Positions 26,039-57,510 of a stretch of DNA of 64,000 nucleotides are shown here, one piece after another. The position numbers and the translations under genes are program-made. Within the stretch, counting starts at the first letter, position 1. Each line of letters opens with the position of its first letter. The stretch covers positions 1 to 64,000 of the IMG/VR virus record IMGVR_UViG_3300032268_000832; one strand, written 5' to 3'. The notes under the pieces are model-generated. The model had not been told where the DNA came from. It worked only from the letters and a program-made list of their open reading frames with translations, and did no database searches.

Positions 26039-26100
26039 ATTTTTTAATTATAAATATTGTTTAATTGGGTAATAAGTAGTATCTTTGTAAAAAAAAAATA

Positions 26101-30883: not shown

Positions 30884-31573
30884 ATGCAAAAAGTTATCGA
30901 AAAAATGGTAAAAACTCAAACACCATTAACATCATGTGTAATAAGAGATGAATATATTTCAGCTAGTGAAATTGCTTTTGATTGTATTTTTGATGGTACT
31001 TCAAAATTTTATCCATGGGAATTACCTAAATCATTACCAAAAGAATTTAAAATAGGTGTTATCGTTGGGTCTAGCGGTAGTGGTAAATCAACTATGTTAA
31101 AACATTTTGGTTTAGAGCAATCACCAGAATGGAATCCAGAAAAATCAATCATATCACATTTTGATTCACCAGAAGACGGTATAAAAAAACTAAGTTCAGT
31201 TGGTCTTAATTCTGTACCTTCATGGTATAAACCTTATCATGTTTTATCCAACGGTGAAAAGTTTAGAGCTGATTTAGCTAGAAAAATAAAATCTAATTCT
31301 GTAATTGATGAATACACTAGTGTTGTTGACAGAAATGTTGCTAAGGCTGCTAGCGTATCTTTATCTAGATATGTTAAGGATAATGGTATCCAGAATGTTG
31401 TATTGTCAACGTGTCATAGGGATATATTAGAATGGCTTGAACCTGATTGGGTGATTGATACAGATAGTGGTGAGCTAATCGACGGTTTTTTTTTGCCCGA
31501 CCAGAAATCAAACTTGACGTATATCGCGCAAACAATGATAGTTGGAGAATGTTTAGCGACCATCACTATTTAG
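30884..31573 (+). CDS. ABC-type ATPase (N-terminal part of probable ATPase-GNAT fusion)
   Basis: GSSGSGKST, LSNGE, VIDEY, STCH. Confidence 0.85.
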   Translation: MQKVIEKMVKTQTPLTSCVIRDEYISASEIAFDCIFDGTSKFYPWELPKSLPKEFKIGVIVGSSGSGKSTMLKHFGLEQSPEWNPEKSIISHFDSPEDGIKKLSSVGLNSVPSWYKPYHVLSNGEKFRADLARKIKSNSVIDEYTSVVDRNVAKAASVSLSRYVKDNGIQNVVLSTCHRDILEWLEPDWVIDTDSGELIDGFFLPDQKSNLTYIAQTMIVGECLATITI

Positions 31574-31968
31574 ATTCTAAAGTAAATAAAGCCGCTAGGT
31601 TTTATGTTGGAATCTGGGATGGAAATGTTGTTGCTTTTGGCGCGGCCATAACTATGCCTAGTGGTACAATTAAAAACGCGTGGAGGGGTCATAGAACGGT
31701 TGTGTTGCCAGATTTTCAAGGGATGGGTATAGGTGTTCGTTTTTCAGATATAATAGCGCAAATCCACTTAAATGAAGGTCATAGATATTTTTCTAGAACT
31801 GCGCACCCGCGCATGGGAGAATATAGGGAGAAATCACAGCTATGGAAACCTACCAGCAAGAACAAAAAATTAAGAACCGATGTTAAACATGAGAACGTGT
31901 ATAACAATCATTTTGCGGATAATAGACGAGTTTGTTATAGTCACGAATATATTGGTTTAAAAACCTAA
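31486..31968 (+). CDS. GNAT acetyltransferase (-1 frame continuation of the ATPase; ATG at 31549)
   Basis: RTVVLPDFQGMGIG acetyl-CoA motif; frame open from 31474 through the T9 run. Confidence 0.8.
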   Translation, partial: FFFARPEIKLDVYRANNDSWRMFSDHHYLDSKVNKAARFYVGIWDGNVVAFGAAITMPSGTIKNAWRGHRTVVLPDFQGMGIGVRFSDIIAQIHLNEGHRYFSRTAHPRMGEYREKSQLWKPTSKNKKLRTDVKHENVYNNHFADNRRVCYSHEYIGLKT

Positions 31969-33068: not shown

Positions 33069-35570
33069 TTACGATTTTTTTGTTTTTTTAGGTTTTTCTA
33101 TTACAAGACTTTCTTGTTCTTTAGAATAAACAATCTTGATTGTATCACCTTCCTCAAACACTTCAGTAAGAATTTCATCGGCTACTAAGTCTTCAACATA
33201 ATGTTGAATCGCTCTGTTTAGCGGTCTAGCACCATACTCTTCGTCATAACCTTCTTTTGCTATAAAATCTAGAGCGCTATCAGAAATGTCTAAGTTAAAT
33301 TTCAATTCAGCTAAACGACTTTCTAAGTGTTTAATCTCAACATTGATAATTTCTCTAATATTTTCTTTTGAAAGAGAATTGAAAATGATAGCTTCGTCTA
33401 TACGGTTAAGAAATTCTGGTTTAAATTTCTTTTTAAGTGCTTTATCAATGATTGCTCTAGATTTAGCTTCTTCATTAAAAGCTGTTGAACCAGTATCAAA
33501 CCCCATAGTCTTACCAAAAGAGTTTGCCTCTTTAACACCGATGTTAGATGTCATAATGATAAGAGCATTTTTAAAGTTAACCTTACGTCCAAGACCATCA
33601 GTTAAATGACCTTCATCAAGTAATTGTAACAATAAGTTAAACACATCATCGTGAGCTTTTTCAATCTCATCAAATAAGATTACACAGTGTGGTTTACGTC
33701 TAACTTTTTCAGTTAACTGACCACCTTGGTCATAACCAACGTAACCTGGTGGTGGACCAACCAATCTAGACACAGAGTGTTTCTCCATGTATTCTGACAT
33801 ATCAACTCTAACAAGAGCATCAGCATCACCATAAACATGTTCGGCTAGCAATTTAGCAAGAAGTGTTTTACCAACACCTGTAGGGCCTAAGAAAATAAAT
33901 GAACCAACAGGTTTGTTTTTATCTTTGATACCAATTCTATTACGTTTGATTGCCTTAACAACTTTAACAACAGCATCGTCTTGACCGATTACTTTACCAC
34001 TCAATTCTTTGTCCATATTCATAAGACGTTTACTTTCTTGAGTTGAAATTTTGTTAAGTGGAATACCAGTCATCATAGAAACAACCTCAGAGATTAAATC
34101 AACACCAACTTCAGTTACTTTAACATCTAGACTTGTTTGCCAATCAACCATAGCTTTTTCTAAACTATCGGTAATTTCTTTTTCTTTATCGCGAAGTTTT
34201 GCAGCTTCTTCATATTGTTGTTTTTTTACGACTTCTGCTTTTTTCTCGTTTATAAGTTTTTTCTCTTCCTCAAGTTCTTTAATAACATCAGGTTTTTCAA
34301 CTGAAATATTAGTAGTAGCACCAGCTTCATCCAAAACATCGATAGCTTTGTCTGGCATTGCTCTATCCATAATGTATCTAGCTGATAATTTAACGCATTC
34401 TTCTATTGCTTCTTCAGTATATTTAACTTTGTGATGTTTTTCATACTTCTCTTTGATGTTCATCAAAATAGTTTTAGTTTGCTCTAAGGTTGGTTCTTCA
34501 ACTAGAACTTGTTGAAAACGTCTAGTTAACGCACCGTCTTTTTCAATGTTTTCTCGATATTCATCAAGTGTTGTAGCACCAATGATTTGTATTTCACCTC
34601 TAGCCAAAGCTGGTTTGAAAATATTAGACGCGTCTAAAGAACCGCTTGAGTTTCCAGCACCTACGATTGTATGTAACTCATCAATGAACAATACAATATC
34701 TGGATTGGCTTTACATTCTTCTAATATGGCTTTCATTCTCTCTTCAAATTGTCCACGATATTTTGTACCAGCAACAATTGAAGCTAAATCTAACATGTAT
34801 ATTTTTTTACCTGTTAGTGTTCTTGGAGCGTTACCCTCAAAAATAAGTTGGGCAAGTCCCTCTACTATGGCAGTTTTTCCAACACCAGGTTCACCAATAA
34901 GGACTGGATTGTTTTTCTTTCTTCTAGATAAAATTTGAGATACACGTTTTATCTCAATTTCTCTACCAACCACTGGGTCCACTTGTTCGTTTTCAACAGC
35001 CTTAGAGATATCTCTACAGAAATTATCTAAAACTGGTGTTTTTGTTTTTGAATCTTTGTTTTTAGGTTTTCTAAAAGATTCATTTTCATCATTTTCATCA
35101 TTGCTAAAAGCACTGTTTTTGTGTTCGAATTTGTCCATATTTGTAACGGTTTTTAAAAATTTGTTGTATGTTATACCAATTTCAGATAACATTTTAATTA
35201 ACGGTAATTTAGAGTCTAAAATACTAAGCATTACATGTGTCGTATCTATGTAGGTATCATTTAGTTTATCACAATGTTTGTCTAAGTTTTTGATTATAAC
35301 TTTCATTTCATCAGAAAATGGTAGACTTTTTCTGTTTGTACCTATTCTAGGGGTCAAGTCACTTTTTCTAACAAAATCAGATACTTTATCGTATACATCA
35401 AAAGTATCCACATTCATAATGTTTAACGCTCTAACACATTCGTTATCGTTGTCTATCATCATAGATAGAATCACATGTTCTGGTTTAATTTTATTATCAT
35501 CATGGTCTTTAGCTTCTCTAATGGCTTGATTCATGATAATTTTAACTTTTGGGTCTATTCTTCTATCCAT
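33069..35570 (-). CDS. clpC: ClpC-type ATP-dependent Clp protease ATPase subunit
   Basis: Clp-N domain; GEPGVGKT/IDELH; UVR-like middle domain QQYEEAAKLRDKE; GPTGVGKT/FDEIEKAH; MGF ClpP-docking loop; GARPL. Confidence 0.92.
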   Translation of the reverse strand: MDRRIDPKVKIIMNQAIREAKDHDDNKIKPEHVILSMMIDNDNECVRALNIMNVDTFDVYDKVSDFVRKSDLTPRIGTNRKSLPFSDEMKVIIKNLDKHCDKLNDTYIDTTHVMLSILDSKLPLIKMLSEIGITYNKFLKTVTNMDKFEHKNSAFSNDENDENESFRKPKNKDSKTKTPVLDNFCRDISKAVENEQVDPVVGREIEIKRVSQILSRRKKNNPVLIGEPGVGKTAIVEGLAQLIFEGNAPRTLTGKKIYMLDLASIVAGTKYRGQFEERMKAILEECKANPDIVLFIDELHTIVGAGNSSGSLDASNIFKPALARGEIQIIGATTLDEYRENIEKDGALTRRFQQVLVEEPTLEQTKTILMNIKEKYEKHHKVKYTEEAIEECVKLSARYIMDRAMPDKAIDVLDEAGATTNISVEKPDVIKELEEEKKLINEKKAEVVKKQQYEEAAKLRDKEKEITDSLEKAMVDWQTSLDVKVTEVGVDLISEVVSMMTGIPLNKISTQESKRLMNMDKELSGKVIGQDDAVVKVVKAIKRNRIGIKDKNKPVGSFIFLGPTGVGKTLLAKLLAEHVYGDADALVRVDMSEYMEKHSVSRLVGPPPGYVGYDQGGQLTEKVRRKPHCVILFDEIEKAHDDVFNLLLQLLDEGHLTDGLGRKVNFKNALIIMTSNIGVKEANSFGKTMGFDTGSTAFNEEAKSRAIIDKALKKKFKPEFLNRIDEAIIFNSLSKENIREIINVEIKHLESRLAELKFNLDISDSALDFIAKEGYDEEYGARPLNRAIQHYVEDLVADEILTEVFEEGDTIKIVYSKEQESLVIEKPKKTKKS

Positions 35571-37252: not shown

Positions 37253-38569
37253 ATGGGATTTATGAACAAACTAGATAAAGATTACACAGACCTTCTTCAA
37301 GACATTCTTGATAACGGTACTGCTAAATCTGACCGTACTGGAACTGGAACGATATCAGTATTCGGAAGACAAATACGTCACAATATGAAAGACGGTTTTC
37401 CTTTACTTACAACCAAGAAAATGCCATTTAAAACAATTGTAACAGAACTTCTTTGGTTCTTACGAGGTGATACAAATATTAAGTATTTGGTTGATAATAA
37501 TTGTCATATTTGGGATGGTGATGCTTATAAGAACTATTTGAATGTCGTTATGTTTGAAAAACCTGACTACTTACACGAAAAATATGGGCATCTTAATATG
37601 AGTGTAAAAAAAGAAGGTGATAAGTATTTACCATTTACCCAAGAAGAATTTATCAACAAAATCAAAACAGATGATAATTTCGCTAAGACATGGGGTGATT
37701 TAGGTCCAATTTATGGTAAGCAATGGAGAGGTTGGAATGGTGTAGATAAAGAAGCATTTTTCAATTCAGATAATTTGGATGAAAGAAATAAAGATGCAAG
37801 ACACAGTATGTTCTATAAAGAATCTGAAATAGACCAACTTGAGGATGCAATTCAATTACTTAAAACTGACCCAGATTCGAGACGTAATAGAGTTTCTGCT
37901 TGGAATGCAGGTGAAATCAAAAACATGGTATTACCTCCATGCCACACCGACTTTCAGTTTTATACAAGAGAGTTGAGTAGACAAGAAAGAAGTGAATACT
38001 ATTACAAACATGGTAATAGTGAAGGTATAGTAGAAGGAAGTTTAGATAGGCCAATATGGAAAGATGATGAAACTGCCCACAAATGGTATAATGAAAGAAG
38101 CGTACCAACCAGAGCAATCTCTTTAATGTGGAATCAACGTTCAGTAGATACATTCTTAGGTTTACCATTCAACATTGCTTCTTATGGATTGTTATTAGAA
38201 ATAATAGCAAAAGAAGTTAACATGGTTCCTGACCAGTTGATTGGTAATTTAGGAGATGTTCATTTATATTCAAATCATATTGAACAAGCTAAAGAACAGA
38301 TTGGTAGAGAATTTACTGAAGAGGAAATATTAGAACATTTACAACAATCAGGTATGGATGCTTTAAAGCATGAACCTAGAATGGAACACATTTCTAAATT
38401 ACCTAAGCGAACAAGAGAACCCTTTCCGTTGCCAAAATTAGTTATGAACCCAATATTTTTAGCAAACTTAGAACATAAAGGATTTGATGAAGCTATAAAT
38501 GGAGAGGTTAATTTTCAAGTAGAAAATTATCAATCACATCCAACAATTAAAGCACCTTTGTCCAACTAG
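37253..38569 (+). CDS. thyA: thymidylate synthase ThyA with several insertions
   Basis: DRTGTGT, ELLWFLRG, LPPCH, QRSVD..LGLPFN, DVHLYSNH. Confidence 0.95.
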   Translation: MGFMNKLDKDYTDLLQDILDNGTAKSDRTGTGTISVFGRQIRHNMKDGFPLLTTKKMPFKTIVTELLWFLRGDTNIKYLVDNNCHIWDGDAYKNYLNVVMFEKPDYLHEKYGHLNMSVKKEGDKYLPFTQEEFINKIKTDDNFAKTWGDLGPIYGKQWRGWNGVDKEAFFNSDNLDERNKDARHSMFYKESEIDQLEDAIQLLKTDPDSRRNRVSAWNAGEIKNMVLPPCHTDFQFYTRELSRQERSEYYYKHGNSEGIVEGSLDRPIWKDDETAHKWYNERSVPTRAISLMWNQRSVDTFLGLPFNIASYGLLLEIIAKEVNMVPDQLIGNLGDVHLYSNHIEQAKEQIGREFTEEEILEHLQQSGMDALKHEPRMEHISKLPKRTREPFPLPKLVMNPIFLANLEHKGFDEAINGEVNFQVENYQSHPTIKAPLSN

Positions 38570-41093: not shown

Positions 41094-41339
41094 ATGCCAA
41101 GAAATAACGATGTATATAGTATAATAGTACCCGCATTATCTGCAAATACAACAGCTCACACGTATACTACAATATATGGTGGTTCAGCTGGTTGTACTGC
41201 AACAATTAATGGTATTTCTGTTAGTGTTGGGGCGTCATCGTCAATTACTATAACAATAAGAACCATAAGTGGTGGTTCTGGTTGTTTTTTATTAGGCGAT
41301 AATCAGAACGTATATTTAGGTTCGCCTAATTTACCATAA
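41094..41339 (+). CDS. small virion-type beta protein (81 aa)
   Basis: GGSAGC..TINGISV...ITITIRTISGGSGCFLLGD; late promoter at 41070. Confidence 0.75.
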   Translation: MPRNNDVYSIIVPALSANTTAHTYTTIYGGSAGCTATINGISVSVGASSSITITIRTISGGSGCFLLGDNQNVYLGSPNLP

Positions 41340-41381
41340 AAAAAAAAAATAATTTAATAAAACAAAAGAAAAAATAAAACT

Positions 41382-42494
41382 ATGGACAAAAATTTTAAAA
41401 TTAATCCAATAGGTCTTAAAGGTAACGAAATTAACGAACGTATGAGACAACTTATGGGTGTTACACCTATTAACGAGGGTTTATCTCGCTCAACAGTTGA
41501 GTTAACAAAACTTGGACCAGATGGTAAGTCATACGGTATTGTTAGAGAAAATCACGAATATTATATCAAAGTATCTGATAAAACTTCAAATTTAACTGTT
41601 GAAGATTTTAAGTATATTGGTGGTTTACAAAATAAAAAACAAGAAGCTTACCCATCATACGCTAAAGCTACTAAACATTTAAACTTAAGATTTAACTCTA
41701 TTTGTGAGTCTTACGATATTGTTAATACATTTAATGTATTTGTTGATGATAAATTATTATCAGAAGGTGTAGCTAAAGAAGCTACAAAACACATTACAGA
41801 TACCAAAGGTAAAGACTTAGACGCTAAGGCTAAAGAAGAAGGTGGTGATAATTTGGCTGGTAAAAAAGTTATGGATGAAATGGAAGAAGTAACACTTACT
41901 GAAGATGAGTTAGCTATTGATGCAATGCTTAATGAAATGGAAGAATTAGATGAAGAAGAATCTAAAGACAACCCATGGGCTATTTGTACTGCTAGTGTTG
42001 GTCGTAAAGACAAAGAAAAATACGAAGCGTGTGTTAGAGACGTTAAAAAAGAAAAAGGTATCAAAGAAGAATTAAAAGGTAACCAATCAAAAATCGATGC
42101 CAATAAAAACGGTAAAATTGATGGTGAGGATTTTAAAATACTTAAAAAAGGTAAAGTTAAAGAAAATTTTGGTGTAGAACCAGAACAAGAACCAACAACT
42201 GATGAGTTAATGGATAGATTAGATAATATGTCAGCAGCTGAATTTATTGAATTATTAGGTGATGCTGGTAAAGATGTTATGAGATTTGCTAAAAGAAAAA
42301 TTGAAGCTGGGACTAAATTTATGTTAAATAAAATGGGTCACGAAGTTGATGAAGCTAAAGATTTCCCTGATTTAACAGGTGATGGTAAAGTAACTAGAGC
42401 TGATATTTTAAAAGGTAGAGGTGTTGATTTAGATGAAGAAATGACTATTGAGGAAATTCAAGAAGCTATTGCTGATTTAAAAAAAAAACTTTAA
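41382..42494 (+). CDS. acidic head-core protein with two EF-hand-like loops
   Basis: IDANKNGKIDGED, PDLTGDGKVTRAD; many L/I-x-E sites. Confidence 0.8.
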   Translation: MDKNFKINPIGLKGNEINERMRQLMGVTPINEGLSRSTVELTKLGPDGKSYGIVRENHEYYIKVSDKTSNLTVEDFKYIGGLQNKKQEAYPSYAKATKHLNLRFNSICESYDIVNTFNVFVDDKLLSEGVAKEATKHITDTKGKDLDAKAKEEGGDNLAGKKVMDEMEEVTLTEDELAIDAMLNEMEELDEEESKDNPWAICTASVGRKDKEKYEACVRDVKKEKGIKEELKGNQSKIDANKNGKIDGEDFKILKKGKVKENFGVEPEQEPTTDELMDRLDNMSAAEFIELLGDAGKDVMRFAKRKIEAGTKFMLNKMGHEVDEAKDFPDLTGDGKVTRADILKGRGVDLDEEMTIEEIQEAIADLKKKL

Positions 42495-44044
42495 CTGAAG
42501 GTAAAAAATACAAACTGAAGTTGGACAATCCAGCGCCAGCGGCTCCTGCCGTTCCTGCGCCTGCTCCAGCTGAACCAATAACAGAACCAGCTGATGACGC
42601 TGGTTTTGGCGATTTTGGTGGTGATGAAACACCAGCAGAAGAACCAGCAAATGATATGTCATTTGAAAAAGAACCTTTTGATGCTGGTGTTGATGCTGAC
42701 GAGGAAACGGACCCTAAAAAATTTATTGAGCAATTGAGTGGTAAGTTAGGTCAATCTTTAAGACAATATACCAAGGACCAAGGTCAACCAGATTTTGAGT
42801 TGGAAAAATTTGCTATTAATTCAGTTATTTCGGCAACACATACAGCTGAAATGGATGAAGAAGATAAAAACGATATTATTAAAAAGATAAATAAATCAGG
42901 TGAAAATGACGCACAAGATTTTGATGGTGACAATCAAGGTGATGCCGATGGTGGAGACAATTCTATCGGTGGACCCGATAACGGGGATGGTGATTCTGAT
43001 GAGCTTGATTTTTCATCAGATGAAGAAGTTAAAGAAAATGATTTCCATATTTATGAACGCGAAGATTTATTCTTAAAAAACCCAAAGAAAAATAATATGT
43101 TTCAACCAAATTCAAATGACATCTTAGATGAAATGAAACCATGTTGGTCAGGGTATAAACAAGTTGGAACGAAGGAAAAAGGTGGAAAAGAAGTACCTAA
43201 TTGTGTTGCTGTAAATGAAAATATTGGTGAATCAAACAATTATATGTTCTGGCAAAACCTTAAAACTATTGTACATGCAGGTTCTGAATTGTTAAATATG
43301 GATAAAAATTCGTTGGACGCTTTATTATCTGATGGACATGGTTGGGCGCTTGACCACATTGCAACTTCAGCAGACGATGTTGAGGAAGTATACCATTTTG
43401 CTGAAGGTGCTTTAAATGAAAGACATGAAGATTCTGGAGAAGAGATGGATTATTCAAAATGGTCAGAACCTATGAAATTAAACAAACCAGTTCAAGTTTC
43501 TAAAGATTTAGCATACCATCTTGCAAATAACATGGCATTGGGGGAATCTATTTTTAGATATGGTTCAGAGAAATTTCAAACACTTTTAAAAGAAGTTACA
43601 CAATTAAAAAATAAGGGTTTAATTGAGCTTAATGAGAATGACCAATTTATCGTTGAAGATTATGACAATGGTTTTATTGTTATTAACGAAAATAGAGTTA
43701 AATTAAATACGATATTTGAAGACTTTGATTCTGAAACTTTAAACGAAGCTGAGTATCAAGGTAAAAAAGTAGAAATAGGTAAACCTAAACGTGGTGGTTC
43801 TAAAAAATTCTATGTTTATGTAAGAAACCCTAAGACGGGTAAAGTTAAAAAAGTATCTTTCGGAGCTAAATCGGGTGGTGGTAATTTAGCAGTTAAATTA
43901 AAAGACCCTAAGGCTAGAAAAGCGTTTGCTGATAGACATAATTGTAAAACTAAAAACGATAAAACAAAACCAGGGTACTGGGCGTGTAGACTTCCAAGAT
44001 ACGCTAAATTATTAGGTTTATCTGGTGGTGGTACATGGTGGTAA
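42479..44044 (+). CDS. modular head-core protein, probable -1 frameshift extension of 41382 (track TTG start 42521)
   Basis: Frame open from 42476; Pro/Ala and acidic linkers; Cys/Lys-rich modules. Confidence 0.75.
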   Translation, partial: KKKTLTEGKKYKLKLDNPAPAAPAVPAPAPAEPITEPADDAGFGDFGGDETPAEEPANDMSFEKEPFDAGVDADEETDPKKFIEQLSGKLGQSLRQYTKDQGQPDFELEKFAINSVISATHTAEMDEEDKNDIIKKINKSGENDAQDFDGDNQGDADGGDNSIGGPDNGDGDSDELDFSSDEEVKENDFHIYEREDLFLKNPKKNNMFQPNSNDILDEMKPCWSGYKQVGTKEKGGKEVPNCVAVNENIGESNNYMFWQNLKTIVHAGSELLNMDKNSLDALLSDGHGWALDHIATSADDVEEVYHFAEGALNERHEDSGEEMDYSKWSEPMKLNKPVQVSKDLAYHLANNMALGESIFRYGSEKFQTLLKEVTQLKNKGLIELNENDQFIVEDYDNGFIVINENRVKLNTIFEDFDSETLNEAEYQGKKVEIGKPKRGGSKKFYVYVRNPKTGKVKKVSFGAKSGGGNLAVKLKDPKARKAFADRHNCKTKNDKTKPGYWACRLPRYAKLLGLSGGGTWW

Positions 44045-44982
44045 AATTTATGAATATGAAACCATATAAAGAAACAGAAAACGGAAACATTATAAGACGT
44101 ACATTTTCAGATAACATACCTGAAAGTGAGTTGGTGTGGCATAGAGACCATGAGGATAGAGTTGTTCTACCACTTAATGAAAATAATTGGATGGTTCAAT
44201 TTGATAACGAATTACCAATGAAGTTAAATGTTGGTGAAGAATTTTTTATACCTAAAGAAACATTTCATAGAGTTATTAAGGGTTCTGGTGAATTGCAAGT
44301 TGAAATTATAAAAACTGATTTTGACGAAGTTATCGAAGAAGGTGAGAAAAAAGCTAAAAGAGACGCTTGTTATCATAAAGTAAGAGCTAGATATGATGTA
44401 TGGCCATCAGCTTATGCTTCTGGTGCTCTTGTTAAGTGTCGTAAGGTTGGCGCTGCTAACTGGGGTAACAAATCGAATGAGGGTGAAGAAAATTTAGATG
44501 AACTGGAAGTTTATGAAGCAAAAAAAACTGATTTTTCAAAAGAAAAATCACAAGGTCTTCATGGATGGTTTTCTAGAAAAGGTGGTGAAGGTTCTAGTGG
44601 TTGGGTTGATTGTAACACATGCAGAAAAGACCCTGATACTGGTAGAAAGAAATGTAAACCATGTGGTAGACAAGATGGTGAAAAAAGAAAGTATCCTGCA
44701 TGTCGCCCAACACCATCATCTTGTGGGACAAGAGGTAAAGGTAAAAAATGGGGTAAAAAAAGTACTAATGAAGGGTTGAATATATCAGAAAAATTTAGTA
44801 TATTTGATAAAAATGAAATTAAGATGAGATTACACGAAACTTTTAACTATGAAGAACCGTTAGTATTACCAGCGGAACCTAAAACAAAACCCAAAGAATC
44901 ACCTATGATTCAACCGTCTAGACGTAATAAACCTTTCTTACCAGAAAGAGAATCACAACCAGACCCAAAAGCTGAAGAATAA
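44035..44982 (+). CDS. modular protein: cupin-like domain plus Cys/Lys-rich mini-modules
   Basis: ELVWHRD..FFIPKETFHRVIKG; RDACYHKV..WPSAYASGALVKCRK; WVDCNTC..CKPC..YPACRP. Confidence 0.75.
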   Translation: MVVKFMNMKPYKETENGNIIRRTFSDNIPESELVWHRDHEDRVVLPLNENNWMVQFDNELPMKLNVGEEFFIPKETFHRVIKGSGELQVEIIKTDFDEVIEEGEKKAKRDACYHKVRARYDVWPSAYASGALVKCRKVGAANWGNKSNEGEENLDELEVYEAKKTDFSKEKSQGLHGWFSRKGGEGSSGWVDCNTCRKDPDTGRKKCKPCGRQDGEKRKYPACRPTPSSCGTRGKGKKWGKKSTNEGLNISEKFSIFDKNEIKMRLHETFNYEEPLVLPAEPKTKPKESPMIQPSRRNKPFLPERESQPDPKAEE

Positions 44983-53048: not shown

Positions 53049-53534
53049 ATGAAATCAGGTAAACAAATTAAAGTCCAAGACCAACAAAATTATAACATAA
53101 CTTACGGTTGTGTAGATAATAAAAACCCTAAATCAATATATGTAAATATTACAGCGTGGTTAGAACCATTATCAGAAAACGAAGAAGATTATAATAAGAT
53201 TATAAAAAATCTTAATAAAAAAATTAGACAAAACCTTTATAATTTTTTATCTTCAGATAAATCAACAATTTTTTTAAAAGATAAGACTATTGTTGATTTA
53301 GATTTAAGAGAATCTGGTATTAAATTTGGGAAGAGGAGTTTCATGAGTTGTGAAATAACTTTATTTCAAAATGGTGAAATTTCCATAAATTCAGAATTAA
53401 TGAAACAAAATTTAAACAACGTTTCTTCTTTAATAATAGATAGAACATTTAATGAAGATAAGGACTTTAGATTCCATAAAAAAAAAATAATCAAATTTAA
53501 ACCCAGCAGTTGCTGGGTTTTTTTATTTAATTAA
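53049..53534 (+). CDS. hypothetical protein (C-terminus uncertain at A10 run)
   Basis: Host-type promoter at ~53027; ORF reads into the terminator at 53499-53520. Confidence 0.7.
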   Translation: MKSGKQIKVQDQQNYNITYGCVDNKNPKSIYVNITAWLEPLSENEEDYNKIIKNLNKKIRQNLYNFLSSDKSTIFLKDKTIVDLDLRESGIKFGKRSFMSCEITLFQNGEISINSELMKQNLNNVSSLIIDRTFNEDKDFRFHKKKIIKFKPSSCWVFLFN

Positions 53535-55680: not shown

Positions 55681-57510
55681 ATGTCACATTTATTGACTTC
55701 AGGACAAGTTGGTAACATCGGATTAAACCACATGAAGGCTATCCGTTTGGAAACACAACAAAAATGGGATTCTTTAGGGTTCTTAGACGGACTTAAAGGC
55801 CATGTAAAAGAAAATATCGCTCAGTTATATGAAAACCAAGCTTCTAGCTTGTTAACTGAAGCTACTACAGCTAATTCATCAGGTTCTTTCGAAACTGTTG
55901 TATTCCCAATTGTAAGAAGAGTTTTCTCTAAATTATTAGCTAATGACGTTGTATCTGTACAAGCTATGAACATGCCAATCGGTAAATTGTTCTTCTTTGT
56001 GCCGTTAACTTCAGAGCGTGTAAACGCTTCTGGTCAAGGTGGTGACCCATATGTTGACGGTGCTCAATATTCTGCTCACACTTCATTTGCAAATTACGGT
56101 TTACCTTCATGTGTTCAAACAACTGATGGTTGCGCTGTAACTCAGTGGATGGGTAAAAACTTATACGATTTATTCTACAATGATGGTTTGTTTGATAACT
56201 CTAAAGGTACGCTTACTATTAACACTGTATCTAATTTAAAAGTATATACATTATTAACTGGTGGTACTTTCTCAATAGTAACTGGTGGTTCAACTGTATT
56301 ACCAATCGCTGCTGATGGTTCAGTTAGAAACGTAATTGTTGCTCTTTCTGGTTTCTCAGCTGGTGCTGGTACTAATGGTAGAGAAGTATTGACAGGTCCT
56401 GATGGAAACGCTATGGATACTGAATCATTCTTAGCTTCATTAAAAGTTGTTGCTCCTGCTACATTATTAGATAGAGATGGTAACGCTGTTATCGGTATTG
56501 GTCAAGAAGTTCCTTTTAGACTTGTTACTCAAAGATATGGTGTTGGTATCGTAACTGGTCCAAACGTTGTTACCGATGGTAACGGTGTATGTTGGTTAGA
56601 ATTAGATTTAACTCACCCAGTTGGAACAACTGCTGTTGCTGGTGCTGCTGCTGCTGGTACAGCTACTTACGATGGTTATGTTGGTGCTTCTGCAACTACA
56701 TTTAGTTCATTCTCTGCTTTTACAGCTGCTTACGCTACTTATGCTAGTTTAGAGTTCGAAACAGAAATGGGTGAAGTATCATTCAGACTTGATGAAGTTG
56801 TTGTTTCTGTAGAAGAAAGAAAATTAAGAGCTACATGGTCTCCAGAGTTAGCGCAAGACGTTAGTGCATTCCACAACATCGACGCTGAAGCTGAATTAAC
56901 TGCAATGCTTTCTGAGCAAGTTGCTGCTGAAATTGACCGTGAAATCCTTAGAGATTTACGTAAAGCTGCTGCATGGCAATTACGTTGGGATTACAATGGA
57001 TGGAGAAAAGCTTCTTCTGCTGCGAGCCCATATACTCAAAAAGAGTGGAACCAAACTTTAATTACTAAATTAAACCAAATTTCAGCTCAAATCCATAAAT
57101 CTACACTTAGAGGTGGTGCTAACTTCATCGTTGTATCTTCAGAGATTTCTGCAATCTTCGACGATTTAGAATACTTCCACGTGTCAGACGCTAACCCAGA
57201 GCAAGACCAATACAACATGGGTATTGAGAGAATCGGTTCATTAGGTGGTAGATATCAAGTATATCGTGACCCATATGCACCAGCATACTCAATCATCATC
57301 GGTCACAAAGGGAAATCATTATTGGATACTGGATACATCTACGCTCCGTATGTGCCATTACAGTTGACTCCAACAATGTATAACCCATTCAACTTCGCTC
57401 CAGTGAAAGGTATCATGACTCGTTACGCTAAAAAAGTGGTTAACAACAGATTCTACGGACACTTGAGAGTTGACGGTGTACAAACATTCAACATCAACGA
57501 ATTAAGATAA
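55681..57510 (+). CDS. gp23: major capsid protein (T4 gp23-like)
   Basis: PIVRRVF..LLANDVVSVQAM; RKLRATWSPELAQDV.AFHNIDAEAEL; YAPYVPL; GIMTRY. Confidence 0.96.
   Translation: MSHLLTSGQVGNIGLNHMKAIRLETQQKWDSLGFLDGLKGHVKENIAQLYENQASSLLTEATTANSSGSFETVVFPIVRRVFSKLLANDVVSVQAMNMPIGKLFFFVPLTSERVNASGQGGDPYVDGAQYSAHTSFANYGLPSCVQTTDGCAVTQWMGKNLYDLFYNDGLFDNSKGTLTINTVSNLKVYTLLTGGTFSIVTGGSTVLPIAADGSVRNVIVALSGFSAGAGTNGREVLTGPDGNAMDTESFLASLKVVAPATLLDRDGNAVIGIGQEVPFRLVTQRYGVGIVTGPNVVTDGNGVCWLELDLTHPVGTTAVAGAAAAGTATYDGYVGASATTFSSFSAFTAAYATYASLEFETEMGEVSFRLDEVVVSVEERKLRATWSPELAQDVSAFHNIDAEAELTAMLSEQVAAEIDREILRDLRKAAAWQLRWDYNGWRKASSAASPYTQKEWNQTLITKLNQISAQIHKSTLRGGANFIVVSSEISAIFDDLEYFHVSDANPEQDQYNMGIERIGSLGGRYQVYRDPYAPAYSIIIGHKGKSLLDTGYIYAPYVPLQLTPTMYNPFNFAPVKGIMTRYAKKVVNNRFYGHLRVDGVQTFNINELR

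What the first reader, a model, noticed from the sequence alone, without database searches (positions are those of the whole stretch)
42470..42530. Candidate programmed -1 frameshift joining two head-core ORFs
Seen: ORF 41382 ends GAT TTA AAA AAA AAA CTT TAA. The in-phase heptamer T TTA AAA (42476-42482) and an A10 run lie between a -1 frame TGA (42473) and the 0 frame TAA (42492). The -1 frame continues KKTLTEGKKYKLKLDNPAP into the 507 aa ORF, which has only a weak TTG start and no promoter. Known: X XXY YYZ frameshifts set protein stoichiometry in phage tail chaperones and capsid genes. Inference: a short (370 aa) and a long (~887 aa) core protein are made. Caveat: a homopolymer assembly error gives the same picture.
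Basis: partly seen in the sequence, partly recalled or inferred. Interest (0 to 1): 0.7.

Follow-up and report, generated by a model that had tools for sequence, protein, structure and literature searches.

The report
Conserved poly-A frameshift joining two phage ORFs
A run of ten A's joins two reading frames of an unknown gene in a large uncultured lake phage, and every DNA relative examined but one keeps this arrangement, so it is a programmed way of making a short and a long protein, not a sequencing error.

Summary
ORF1 (41382-42494, 370 aa) ends ...GAT TTA AAA AAA AAA CTT TAA. The A10 run lies at 42479-42488. The -1 frame is open from 42476 to 44044.

An A10 run alone is not unusual here: the 306-kb genome has 36 A/T runs of 9 or more. 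Its position and conservation are far beyond chance.
- All 119 ORF1 homologues listed from the protein search end in KKK plus 1-5 residues.
- In 98 of 99 IMG/VR loci (66 distinct junctions; ORF1 identity down to about 40%), ORF2 sits in the -1 frame.
- The overlap always holds an A9-A12 run, never a shorter one, although the flanking codons differ.
- ORF2 often has no start codon for more than 100 codons, yet its protein is conserved from the run onward.
- One contig carries A11 and a continuous 791-aa fusion.

Four DNA contigs, including the source sample, read A10. Two of three metatranscriptome contigs that span the run read A11.

The T_TTA_AAA heptamer is not conserved, and no conserved RNA structure follows the run. 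I conclude this is programmed recoding that makes 370-aa and 887-aa products. RNA polymerase slippage is the more likely mechanism, and ribosomal -1 slippage on A_AAA_AAA is the close rival. The "head-core" label has no support. A second conserved site of the same type (T9 at 31486) lies in the same window.

The parts
41382..42494 (+). ORF1 (370 aa, P0001), the product of standard decoding. It has a conserved 130-aa N-terminal domain, a variable middle with EF-hand/dockerin-like loops, and an invariant C-terminal KKK.
   Evidence: All 119 listed homologues end in KKK plus 1-5 residues.
42479..42488 (+). A10 run, the recoding site. In the 0 frame it reads ttA AAA AAA AAA.
   Evidence: It is conserved as A9-A12 in 66 of 66 distinct junction contexts. 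DNA contigs read A10. Two of three RNA contigs that span it read A11.
42476..42482 (+). It is in phase but not conserved outside the window's own clade.
42473..42475 (+). TGA that closes the -1 frame upstream and sets the 5' limit of the shift window.
42492..42494 (+). 0-frame stop TAA, one codon after the run.
   Evidence: The 0-frame stop lies within 8 codons of the run in 66 of 66 contexts.
42496..42498 (+). +1-frame stop TGA. It would end translation of a transcript that had lost one A.
   Evidence: The +1 frame stops within 8 codons in 66 of 66 contexts, and within 3 codons in 82% against 39% for the background.
42488..44044 (+). ORF2 part of the fused product in the -1 frame (518 aa from T at 42488; P0002 holds it with 4 leading residues). 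It contains a Pro/Ala linker, an acidic disordered region, helical domains, and a C-terminal phrog_7595 domain.
42506..42523 (+). KYKLKL motif in the -1 frame. It lies upstream of or across the only candidate start (TTG 42521) and is conserved through synonymous changes in all clades.

Best explanation
This is one gene decoded in two ways. Standard decoding of ORF1 stops one codon after a conserved A10 run and gives a 370-aa protein. A fraction of expression events enters the -1 frame within the run and continues through ORF2, which has no conserved start of its own, giving an 887-aa fusion (...ADLKKK-TLTEGKKYKLKL...). The most likely step that changes the frame is RNA polymerase slippage on the A10/T10 hybrid. 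Slippage adds one untemplated A, giving A11 mRNA that is then translated normally, as in Shigella mxiE and the reverse of Thermus dnaX. No phage RNA polymerase gene was found, so the host enzyme probably does this. Shown: the anatomy, its conservation, the lack of an ORF2 start, A10 in DNA, and A11 in some RNA contigs. Inferred: that both products are made and needed, their ratio, and which machine slips.
For: (1) In 18 of 19 loci and 80 of 80 loci, ORF2 is in the -1 frame and an A run lies in the 13-64 nt overlap. These reduce to 66 distinct junctions: A10 58, A9 4, A11 3, A12 1, and none shorter than 9. (2) All 119 listed ORF1 homologues from independent metagenomes end in KKK plus 1-5 residues. 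(3) The wobble base before the run is A in 61 of 66 contexts, across 8 different codons, against a background of 0.37. This means the nucleotide run is under selection, not only the Lys-Lys-Lys peptide. (4) In many loci the first ATG/GTG/TTG in the ORF2 frame lies 100-132 codons downstream, while homology to P0002 starts at residues 1-11. The window's TTG is CTG in L010/L011. (5) L059 is the canonical arrangement plus one A (A11) and encodes a continuous 791-aa protein that aligns to both ORFs. (6) Logan contigs of four DNA runs read A10, including the source sample at depth 23. Of three metatranscriptome contigs that span the run, two from different studies read A11, and a fourth contig ends exactly at the run. 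A Fisher test against the DNA tally (1 of 71) gives p = 0.003. (7) A minimum length of 9 matches the known slippage-prone length: A9 in Thermus dnaX and the run of Us in mxiE (PMC1088944). (8) In this genome, 63% of 7-nt runs and 49% of 8-nt runs lie inside genes, but only 4 of 36 runs of 9 or more do. (9) Both non-fusion frames stop within 8 codons of the run in 66 of 66 contexts. (10) No conserved RNA structure follows the run. The window's hairpin starts 30 nt downstream and has z = -1.95.
Against: The RNA evidence is thin. It rests on three contigs at depth 2-12 from Logan assemblies, not on raw reads. RNA libraries can carry DNA, reverse transcriptase also slips on homopolymers, and the RNA contigs could come from rare A11 strains such as L059. 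The run nearly always contains an in-phase A_AAA_AAA, which is what a ribosomal -1 shift needs. At the second site in this window (T9, 31486), five relatives carry the non-homopolymeric heptamer A_AAT_TTT at the same place, which argues for ribosomal shifting in those lineages. Neither protein product has been observed.
Confidence: 0.52

Rival explanations
1. Programmed ribosomal -1 frameshifting. The mRNA keeps A10, and tRNA-Lys pairs slip back one base on an in-phase A_AAA_AAA. Three Lys codons give several chances to slip. The same 887-aa product results.
For: An in-phase A_AAA_AAA is present in 65 of 66 contexts. The short overlap window with a 0-frame stop 1-8 codons later is typical. One of three RNA contigs reads A10. 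At the T9 site of the same window, five relatives have the classical heptamer A_AAT_TTT in place of the homopolymer. -1 frameshifts are common in phage genes (PMC5009743, PMC10885494).
Against: Seven A's would suffice, yet no lineage has fewer than nine, none uses A_AAA_AAG, and the wobble A before the run is kept. No conserved downstream stimulator was found. Two RNA contigs read A11. Stops are kept close in the +1 frame as well, which a pure -1 ribosomal shift does not need.
Confidence: 0.33
2. DNA-level phase variation. Replication slippage yields subpopulations of A10 (short form) and A11 (fused form) genomes, and the long protein comes only from A11 genomes.
For: L059 has A11 and a continuous ORF. 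At the T9 site, 3 of 48 relatives that carry a recoding motif have T10 and continuous ORFs. Baranov et al. note that such runs are also hypermutable in replication.
Against: Consensus DNA keeps the split arrangement in 66 of 67 distinct contexts, and all six clade-specific metagenome matches and all four DNA runs read A10. A variant that is rare in DNA would not explain strict conservation of ORF2 in genomes that could never express it.
Confidence: 0.05
3. Two separate genes. ORF2 is translated from its own start (TTG 42521 or a later ATG), possibly by termination-reinitiation, and the A run is incidental.
For: Gene callers annotate the two as separate proteins everywhere. One subclade has a conserved Met (MSTGLF...) 14 codons after the run.
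Against: The first start codon in the ORF2 frame is not conserved and lies 13-132 codons downstream. Gene callers pick many different starts. Protein conservation begins at the run (KKK[ST]L...KYKLKL), upstream of any start. The frame relation is -1 in 98 of 99 loci, which separate genes do not require.
Confidence: 0.05
4. Homopolymer assembly error or a pseudogene. The true genome would have A11 and a single ORF.
For: Homopolymers are error-prone. One relative (L059) is continuous, and L023 shows several homopolymer length differences.
Against: An independent Logan assembly of the source run reads A10 at depth 23, and three other DNA runs agree. Ninety-eight independent viral contigs and 119 protein calls show the same split. 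Run lengths of 9, 10, 11 and 12 all keep the -1 relation because they differ by flank substitutions, not by indels. Elsewhere in the genome, only one other long run interrupts a gene, and it is conserved too.
Confidence: 0.02

Closest known systems
Shigella flexneri mxiE (also spa13): programmed transcriptional slippage
   Same: Two overlapping ORFs are joined when RNA polymerase adds one untemplated nucleotide in a homopolymer run of about nine. The longer, fused protein needs the slip, and standard decoding gives a short product (PMC1088944; PMC5009743).
   Different: That case is a bacterial regulator gene. This one is a phage gene of unknown function, conserved across more than 60 distinct phage lineages, with an A9-A12 run. 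Slippage is shown experimentally for mxiE and only indicated here.
dnaX of Thermus thermophilus (A9, transcriptional slippage) versus E. coli (A_AAA_AAG, ribosomal -1)
   Same: Two products of fixed N-terminal identity come from one gene at an A run. Related genes reach the same result by polymerase slippage or by ribosomal frameshifting. The T9 / A_AAT_TTT alternatives at the window's second site mirror this.
   Different: In dnaX the recoded product is the shorter one. Here it is the longer one. The proteins are not homologous.
IS element transposases (orfA-orfB fusions at A runs or A_AAA_AAG)
   Same: A -1 frame fusion of two ORFs at an A-rich slippery run, with no own start for orfB.
   Different: There are no transposase domains, inverted repeats or multiple copies here. 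This is a single-copy gene in a fixed place in the phage genome.
Phage -1 frameshifts that set stoichiometry (lambda G/GT tail chaperone, T7 10A/10B, phage A2 major head protein)
   Same: A phage late-region gene gives a short and a C-terminally extended form through a shift into the -1 frame (PMC5009743; PMC10885494 reference 41).
   Different: Those use X_XXY_YYZ heptamers and ribosomes, and the proteins are identified as chaperone or capsid. Here the signal is a homopolymer of 9 or more. The extension (518 aa) is longer than ORF1. The protein matches no chaperone or capsid family. The gene is not next to a tape-measure gene, and the capsid gene lies elsewhere (55681-57510).

Membership tests
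Programmed transcriptional slippage (mxiE / Thermus dnaX / IS type) | Homopolymeric A or T run about as long as the RNA-DNA hybrid (9 or more) at the junction | tested here: met
   A9-A12 in 66 of 66 distinct contexts, never shorter. The window has A10.
Programmed transcriptional slippage (mxiE / Thermus dnaX / IS type) | Run length heterogeneous in RNA but fixed in DNA | tested here: inconclusive
   All four DNA contigs read A10. Two of three RNA contigs read A11, and one contig ends at the run. Only assembled contigs at low depth were available, not raw reads.
Programmed transcriptional slippage (mxiE / Thermus dnaX / IS type) | Such runs are otherwise selected against in coding sequence of the same genome | tested here: met
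   Share inside genes: 63% of 7-nt runs, 49% of 8-nt runs, and 4 of 36 runs of 9 or more, with 92% of the genome coding.
Programmed -1 ribosomal frameshift | In-phase X_XXY_YYZ slippery heptamer | tested here: met
   A_AAA_AAA is in phase in 65 of 66 contexts. T_TTA_AAA occurs only in the window's clade.
Programmed -1 ribosomal frameshift | Stimulatory RNA structure or SD-like element at the proper distance, conserved | tested here: not met
   The alignment fold of 15 diverse junctions gives no conserved pairs. The window's hairpin begins 30 nt after the run, z = -1.95. Many bacterial sites work without a stimulator, so this lowers membership only mildly.
Programmed -1 ribosomal frameshift | mRNA sequence unchanged at the site | tested here: inconclusive
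   One RNA contig reads A10 and two read A11.
Recoded gene of either mechanism | Downstream frame conserved as protein from the shift site and lacking its own conserved start | tested here: met
Recoded gene of either mechanism | Trans-frame protein observed | not testable with these tools
   No proteomic data are available and the phage is uncultured (no homologue in GenBank phages). The A11 contig L059 shows only that the fused frame is coherent.
Tail assembly chaperone G/GT frameshift | Pair of small ORFs just upstream of the tape-measure gene, with chaperone homology | tested here: not met
   No chaperone or tape-measure hit was found. The neighbours are unknown proteins followed by terminase, portal, protease and capsid.
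   No PHROG or Pfam function, no PDB sequence hit and no fold match. Virion presence cannot be tested here.
Assembly error / pseudogene | Split absent from relatives and from independent reads | tested here: not met
   The split is present in 98 of 99 loci and in all four DNA runs.

The most novel reading that the evidence does not exclude
A widespread clade of large (about 300-360 kb), AT-rich, uncultured freshwater phages uses programmed RNA-polymerase slippage on A/T runs of 9 or more as a regular gene-expression device. It does so in at least two unrelated genes per genome: A10 in this gene, and T9 in a phrog_11143 gene that is continuous in distant relatives. Some lineages have swapped the homopolymer for a ribosomal heptamer. 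To my knowledge this would be the first conserved transcriptional-slippage recoding described in dsDNA phages. The 2016 review's table of polymerase slippage in viruses marks its entries only as RNA viruses.
Probability: 0.4. Interest if true: 0.78.

Novelty: new member of a known kind. Interest (0 to 1): 0.62.

Why it matters
The two ORFs are annotated everywhere as separate hypothetical proteins. In fact they form one recoded gene family with thousands of homologues in the protein searches (1,374 ORF1 and 2,012 ORF2 hits). Gene callers therefore mis-annotate ORF2 starts systematically.

The site is a clean natural case for studying homopolymer recoding:
- The run length is held at 9-12 over deep divergence.
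- There are many natural flank variants.
- A sister site in the same genomes alternates between a T9 run, a classical heptamer and an unbroken frame.

This allows a direct test of when evolution uses polymerase slippage and when it uses ribosomal slippage, and of how a phage sets the ratio of a short protein to one extended by 518 aa. If the slippage is transcriptional, it extends that mechanism to dsDNA phages.

Tried and rejected
Function:
- PHROGs and Pfam gave only unknown-function families and a weak dockerin/EF-hand loop.
- A PDB sequence search found nothing useful.
- The Atlas feature search found only viral DUFs at scores of 0.88 or less.
- The AlphaFold model of the ORF1 N-domain (pLDDT 66) and of ORF2 (pLDDT 55, mostly disordered) gave no meaningful fold match: best Foldseek E = 0.056, best VIA Z = 5.9 on generic helical hairpins.

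Relatives among cultured phages:
- ORF1 has none.
- ORF2 shares only C-terminal modules with Melnitz gp18, immuto and pelagiphage proteins. These are single ORFs with other N-termini and say nothing about the junction.

RNA structure: there is no conserved structure after the run and none before it (z = +0.9).

Promoter scan: the count is no higher than in shuffles.

Phage RNA polymerase: no match to PF00940 or PF00562. The PF00940 control did not ring, and divergent phage polymerases could be missed.

Metagenome pattern scan: the pattern was too loose. Only 6 of 89 matches were true relatives, all with A10.

NCBI cluster names: none.

Literature: I found no paper describing this gene family or a poly-A recoding site in freshwater jumbo phages.

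Full report
**1. Observation**

The window is the first 64 kb of a 306,463-bp linear IMG/VR virus record (86% complete, about 31% GC) from freshwater metagenomes.
- ORF1 (41382-42494, 370 aa, P0001) ends GAT TTA AAA AAA AAA CTT TAA.
- The A10 run is 42479-42488.
- The -1 frame has TGA at 42473-42475 and is then open to 44044 (P0002, FKKKTLTEGKKYKLKLDNPAP...).
- The first start codon in that frame is TTG at 42521.
- A shift within the run gives a product of 369 + 518 = 887 aa.

**2. Is it more than chance?**

The run alone is not unusual. The genome has 24 A runs and 12 T runs of 9 or more. Almost all of them sit between genes, typically just before a start codon.

With 92% of the genome coding, the share of runs lying inside genes falls sharply with length:
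- 7-nt runs: 63%
- 8-nt runs: 49%
- runs of 9 or more: 4 of 36

A genome-wide search for long frames that overlap without a nearby start found only two joined by a long homopolymer: this one and a T9 run at 31486. The assembly is therefore not riddled with homopolymer breaks, and long runs are selected against in coding sequence.

**3. Relatives**

Both ORFs have many metagenomic homologues (1,374 and 2,012 hits) and are called as separate proteins on the same contigs. Key results:
- All 119 listed ORF1 homologues end in KKK plus 1-5 residues, although their middle parts differ greatly in length and content.
- In the first set of 19 IMG/VR loci, 18 have ORF2 in the -1 frame with an A9/A10 run in the overlap. 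The exception, L023, has several homopolymer length differences from its near-twin L021.
- In a second, profile-based set, 80 of 80 loci show the same arrangement.
- Collapsed to 66 distinct junction contexts, the run is A10 in 58, A9 in 4, A11 in 3 and A12 in 1. It is never shorter.
- Length differences arise from substitutions at the flanks, so the -1 relation is kept.
- The codon before the run varies (TTA, GTA, TCA, CCA, GGA, ATA, CTA, CAA) but ends in A in 61 of 66 contexts, against 37% A at third positions elsewhere in ORF1. The nucleotide run is therefore under selection, not merely a Lys-Lys-Lys peptide.

**4. ORF2 has no start of its own**

- The first ATG/GTG/TTG in the ORF2 frame lies anywhere from 13 to 132 codons after the upstream stop. 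In about fifteen loci it lies more than 100 codons downstream, while homology to P0002 begins at residues 1-11.
- The window's TTG is CTG in L010/L011.
- Gene callers choose many different starts.
- The peptide KKK[ST]L...KYKLK[LIV] directly after the run is conserved through synonymous changes.
- One contig, L059, is the canonical arrangement plus one A (A11). It encodes a continuous 791-aa protein whose N-terminus aligns to ORF1 and whose remainder aligns to all of ORF2. Removing one A from it recreates VKKKF-stop in the 0 frame.
- Among the 120 ORF2 homologues listed, it is the only fusion.

**5. Reads**

Only Logan contigs were available, not raw reads.

| Run | Type | Contig | Run length read |
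|---|---|---|---|
| X1 (source sample) | DNA | 18.7 kb, depth 23 | A10 |
| X2 | DNA | depth 4.4 | A10 |
| X24 | labelled RNA?, judged probably DNA | depth 3.1 | A10 |
| X15 | labelled RNA?, judged probably DNA | depth 8.8 | A10 |
| X22 | metatranscriptome | depth 11.6 | A10 |
| X23 | metatranscriptome | 151 nt, no other difference | A11 |
| X16 | metatranscriptome | 230 nt | A11 |
| X19 | metatranscriptome | ends exactly at the end of the run | does not span the run |

The DNA rows are and the RNA rows. Six clade-specific matches in the metagenome collection also read A10. Against the DNA tally (1 extra A in 71), two of three RNA contigs with an extra A gives Fisher p = 0.003.

This is suggestive, not conclusive. 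Depth is low, RNA libraries can contain DNA, reverse transcriptase slips on homopolymers, and the contexts are not independent.

**6. Mechanism**

Separate initiation of ORF2 does not fit sections 3 and 4. DNA-level phase variation may occur (L059; T10 variants at the second site), but it cannot explain conservation of ORF2 in genomes whose consensus is always the split form.

Two mechanisms remain, and both give the same protein.

For RNA polymerase slippage:
- The strict minimum run of 9 matches known cases: Thermus dnaX A9, the run of Us in Shigella mxiE, and IS elements (PMC1088944).
- The wobble A before the run is selected.
- A_AAA_AAG or 7-8-nt variants are absent.
- No conserved downstream structure exists.
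- Stops lie close in both the 0 and the +1 frame in all 66 contexts.
- Runs of 9 or more are depleted in coding sequence.
- A11 appears in RNA contigs.

For ribosomal -1 shifting:
- An in-phase A_AAA_AAA is nearly always present.
- One RNA contig reads A10.
- At the sister site, five relatives use the heptamer A_AAT_TTT.

I put polymerase slippage at about 0.5 and ribosomal shifting at about 0.33. They are not mutually exclusive. No RNA polymerase gene was detected in the phage (with caveats), and its terminase is distantly T4-like (about 30% identity). The host enzyme would therefore be the one that slips.

**7. What the protein is**

Its function is unknown.
- ORF1 has a conserved 130-aa N-domain, a modular variable middle with EF-hand/dockerin-like Ca-binding loops, and the KKK end.
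- ORF2 has a Pro/Ala linker, a long acidic disordered stretch, helical domains, a CxxxxC-type motif shared with several phrogs, and a C-terminal phrog_7595 domain. That domain occurs as a stand-alone small protein in pelagiphages and as the C-terminus of Melnitz gp18.
- Nothing links either ORF to a head core.
- The gene lies between thymidylate synthase (37253-38569) and a block of unknown genes followed by terminase (47680), portal (49505), protease (53563) and capsid (55681).

The split form is kept in 66 of 67 contexts rather than a simple fusion. This implies that the short form, or a set ratio of short to long, matters; that is an inference.

**8. Second site**

A T9 run at 31486-31494 (GGT TTT TTT TTG) splits a phrog_11143 gene into 30884-31573 (profile positions 35-194 of 357) and a -1 frame 31474-31968 (positions 199-351). 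Among 80 relatives:
- 40 keep T9 and the -1 relation.
- 3 have T10 and a continuous ORF.
- 5 have the -1 relation with A_AAT_TTT.
- 32 more distant ones (the 33 continuous, run-free loci include the cut locus L193) are continuous, with no T run of 6 or more at the junction; the four checked in full (L184, L196, L206, L215) have ORFs of 353-407 aa.

At this site the fused product is plainly the ancestral full-length protein. This shows that -1-frame recoding at a homopolymer works in this phage clade, and it mirrors the dnaX story of alternative mechanisms.

**9. Comparison and novelty**

The site works like mxiE, dnaX and IS-element recoding, and it serves the same purpose as phage G/GT or T7 10A/10B frameshifts. 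It belongs to none of those gene families. I found no description of this family or site. I rate it a new member of a known kind. If the transcriptional mechanism holds, it would extend programmed polymerase slippage to dsDNA phages.

Noticed in passing
window 31486-31494 (ORFs 30884-31573 and 31474-31968, + strand): A second conserved -1 recoding site. A T9 run splits a phrog_11143 gene. 40 relatives keep T9 and the -1 relation, 3 have T10 and are continuous, 5 use A_AAT_TTT instead, and 33 distant relatives are continuous with no long T run at the junction.
   Followed up: yes
window 41338-41349, 53478-53487, 26089-26098; genome 207127, 250497 and others: Most A/T runs of 9 or more lie just upstream of start codons, several in a similar context (cAT-A10-12-TAAT). 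This may be a leader or promoter element, and reiterative transcription could occur there.
   Followed up: no
window 44349-44466 (inside ORF 44035-44982): A stretch of about 120 nt is 77-81% identical at the DNA level to hypothetical genes of Prochlorococcus phages P-SSM2/P-SSM5 and Synechococcus phage ACG-2014f. It is a small, widely shared module (phrog_727) in otherwise unrelated phages.
   Followed up: no
window 37253-38569: The thymidylate synthase is 438 aa, while the Pfam model has 266 positions. The match spans residues 9-357 for model positions 1-229, so there is an insertion of roughly 120 aa.
   Followed up: no
window 33069-35570 (- strand): A large ATP-dependent protease/AAA+ gene (phrog_4871, E 6.7e-253) lies on the opposite strand in a short block with reversed GC skew.
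   Followed up: no
window 55681-57510: The major head protein is 609 aa, but the capsid homology covers only residues 345-586. There is a long N-terminal extension of unknown nature.
   Followed up: no
L023 (IMGVR_UViG_3300040786_000030) versus L021: L023 differs from its near-identical relative L021 by single-base losses in at least two A runs (A9 versus A10, A5 versus A6). It looks like a homopolymer-error-prone assembly and was set aside.
   Followed up: partly
L109, L110, L120 and proteins P0148-P0162: One subclade has a conserved Met (MSTGLF...) 14 codons after the run in the ORF2 frame, so ORF2 might also be made on its own there. The peptide upstream of that Met is still conserved.
   Followed up: partly
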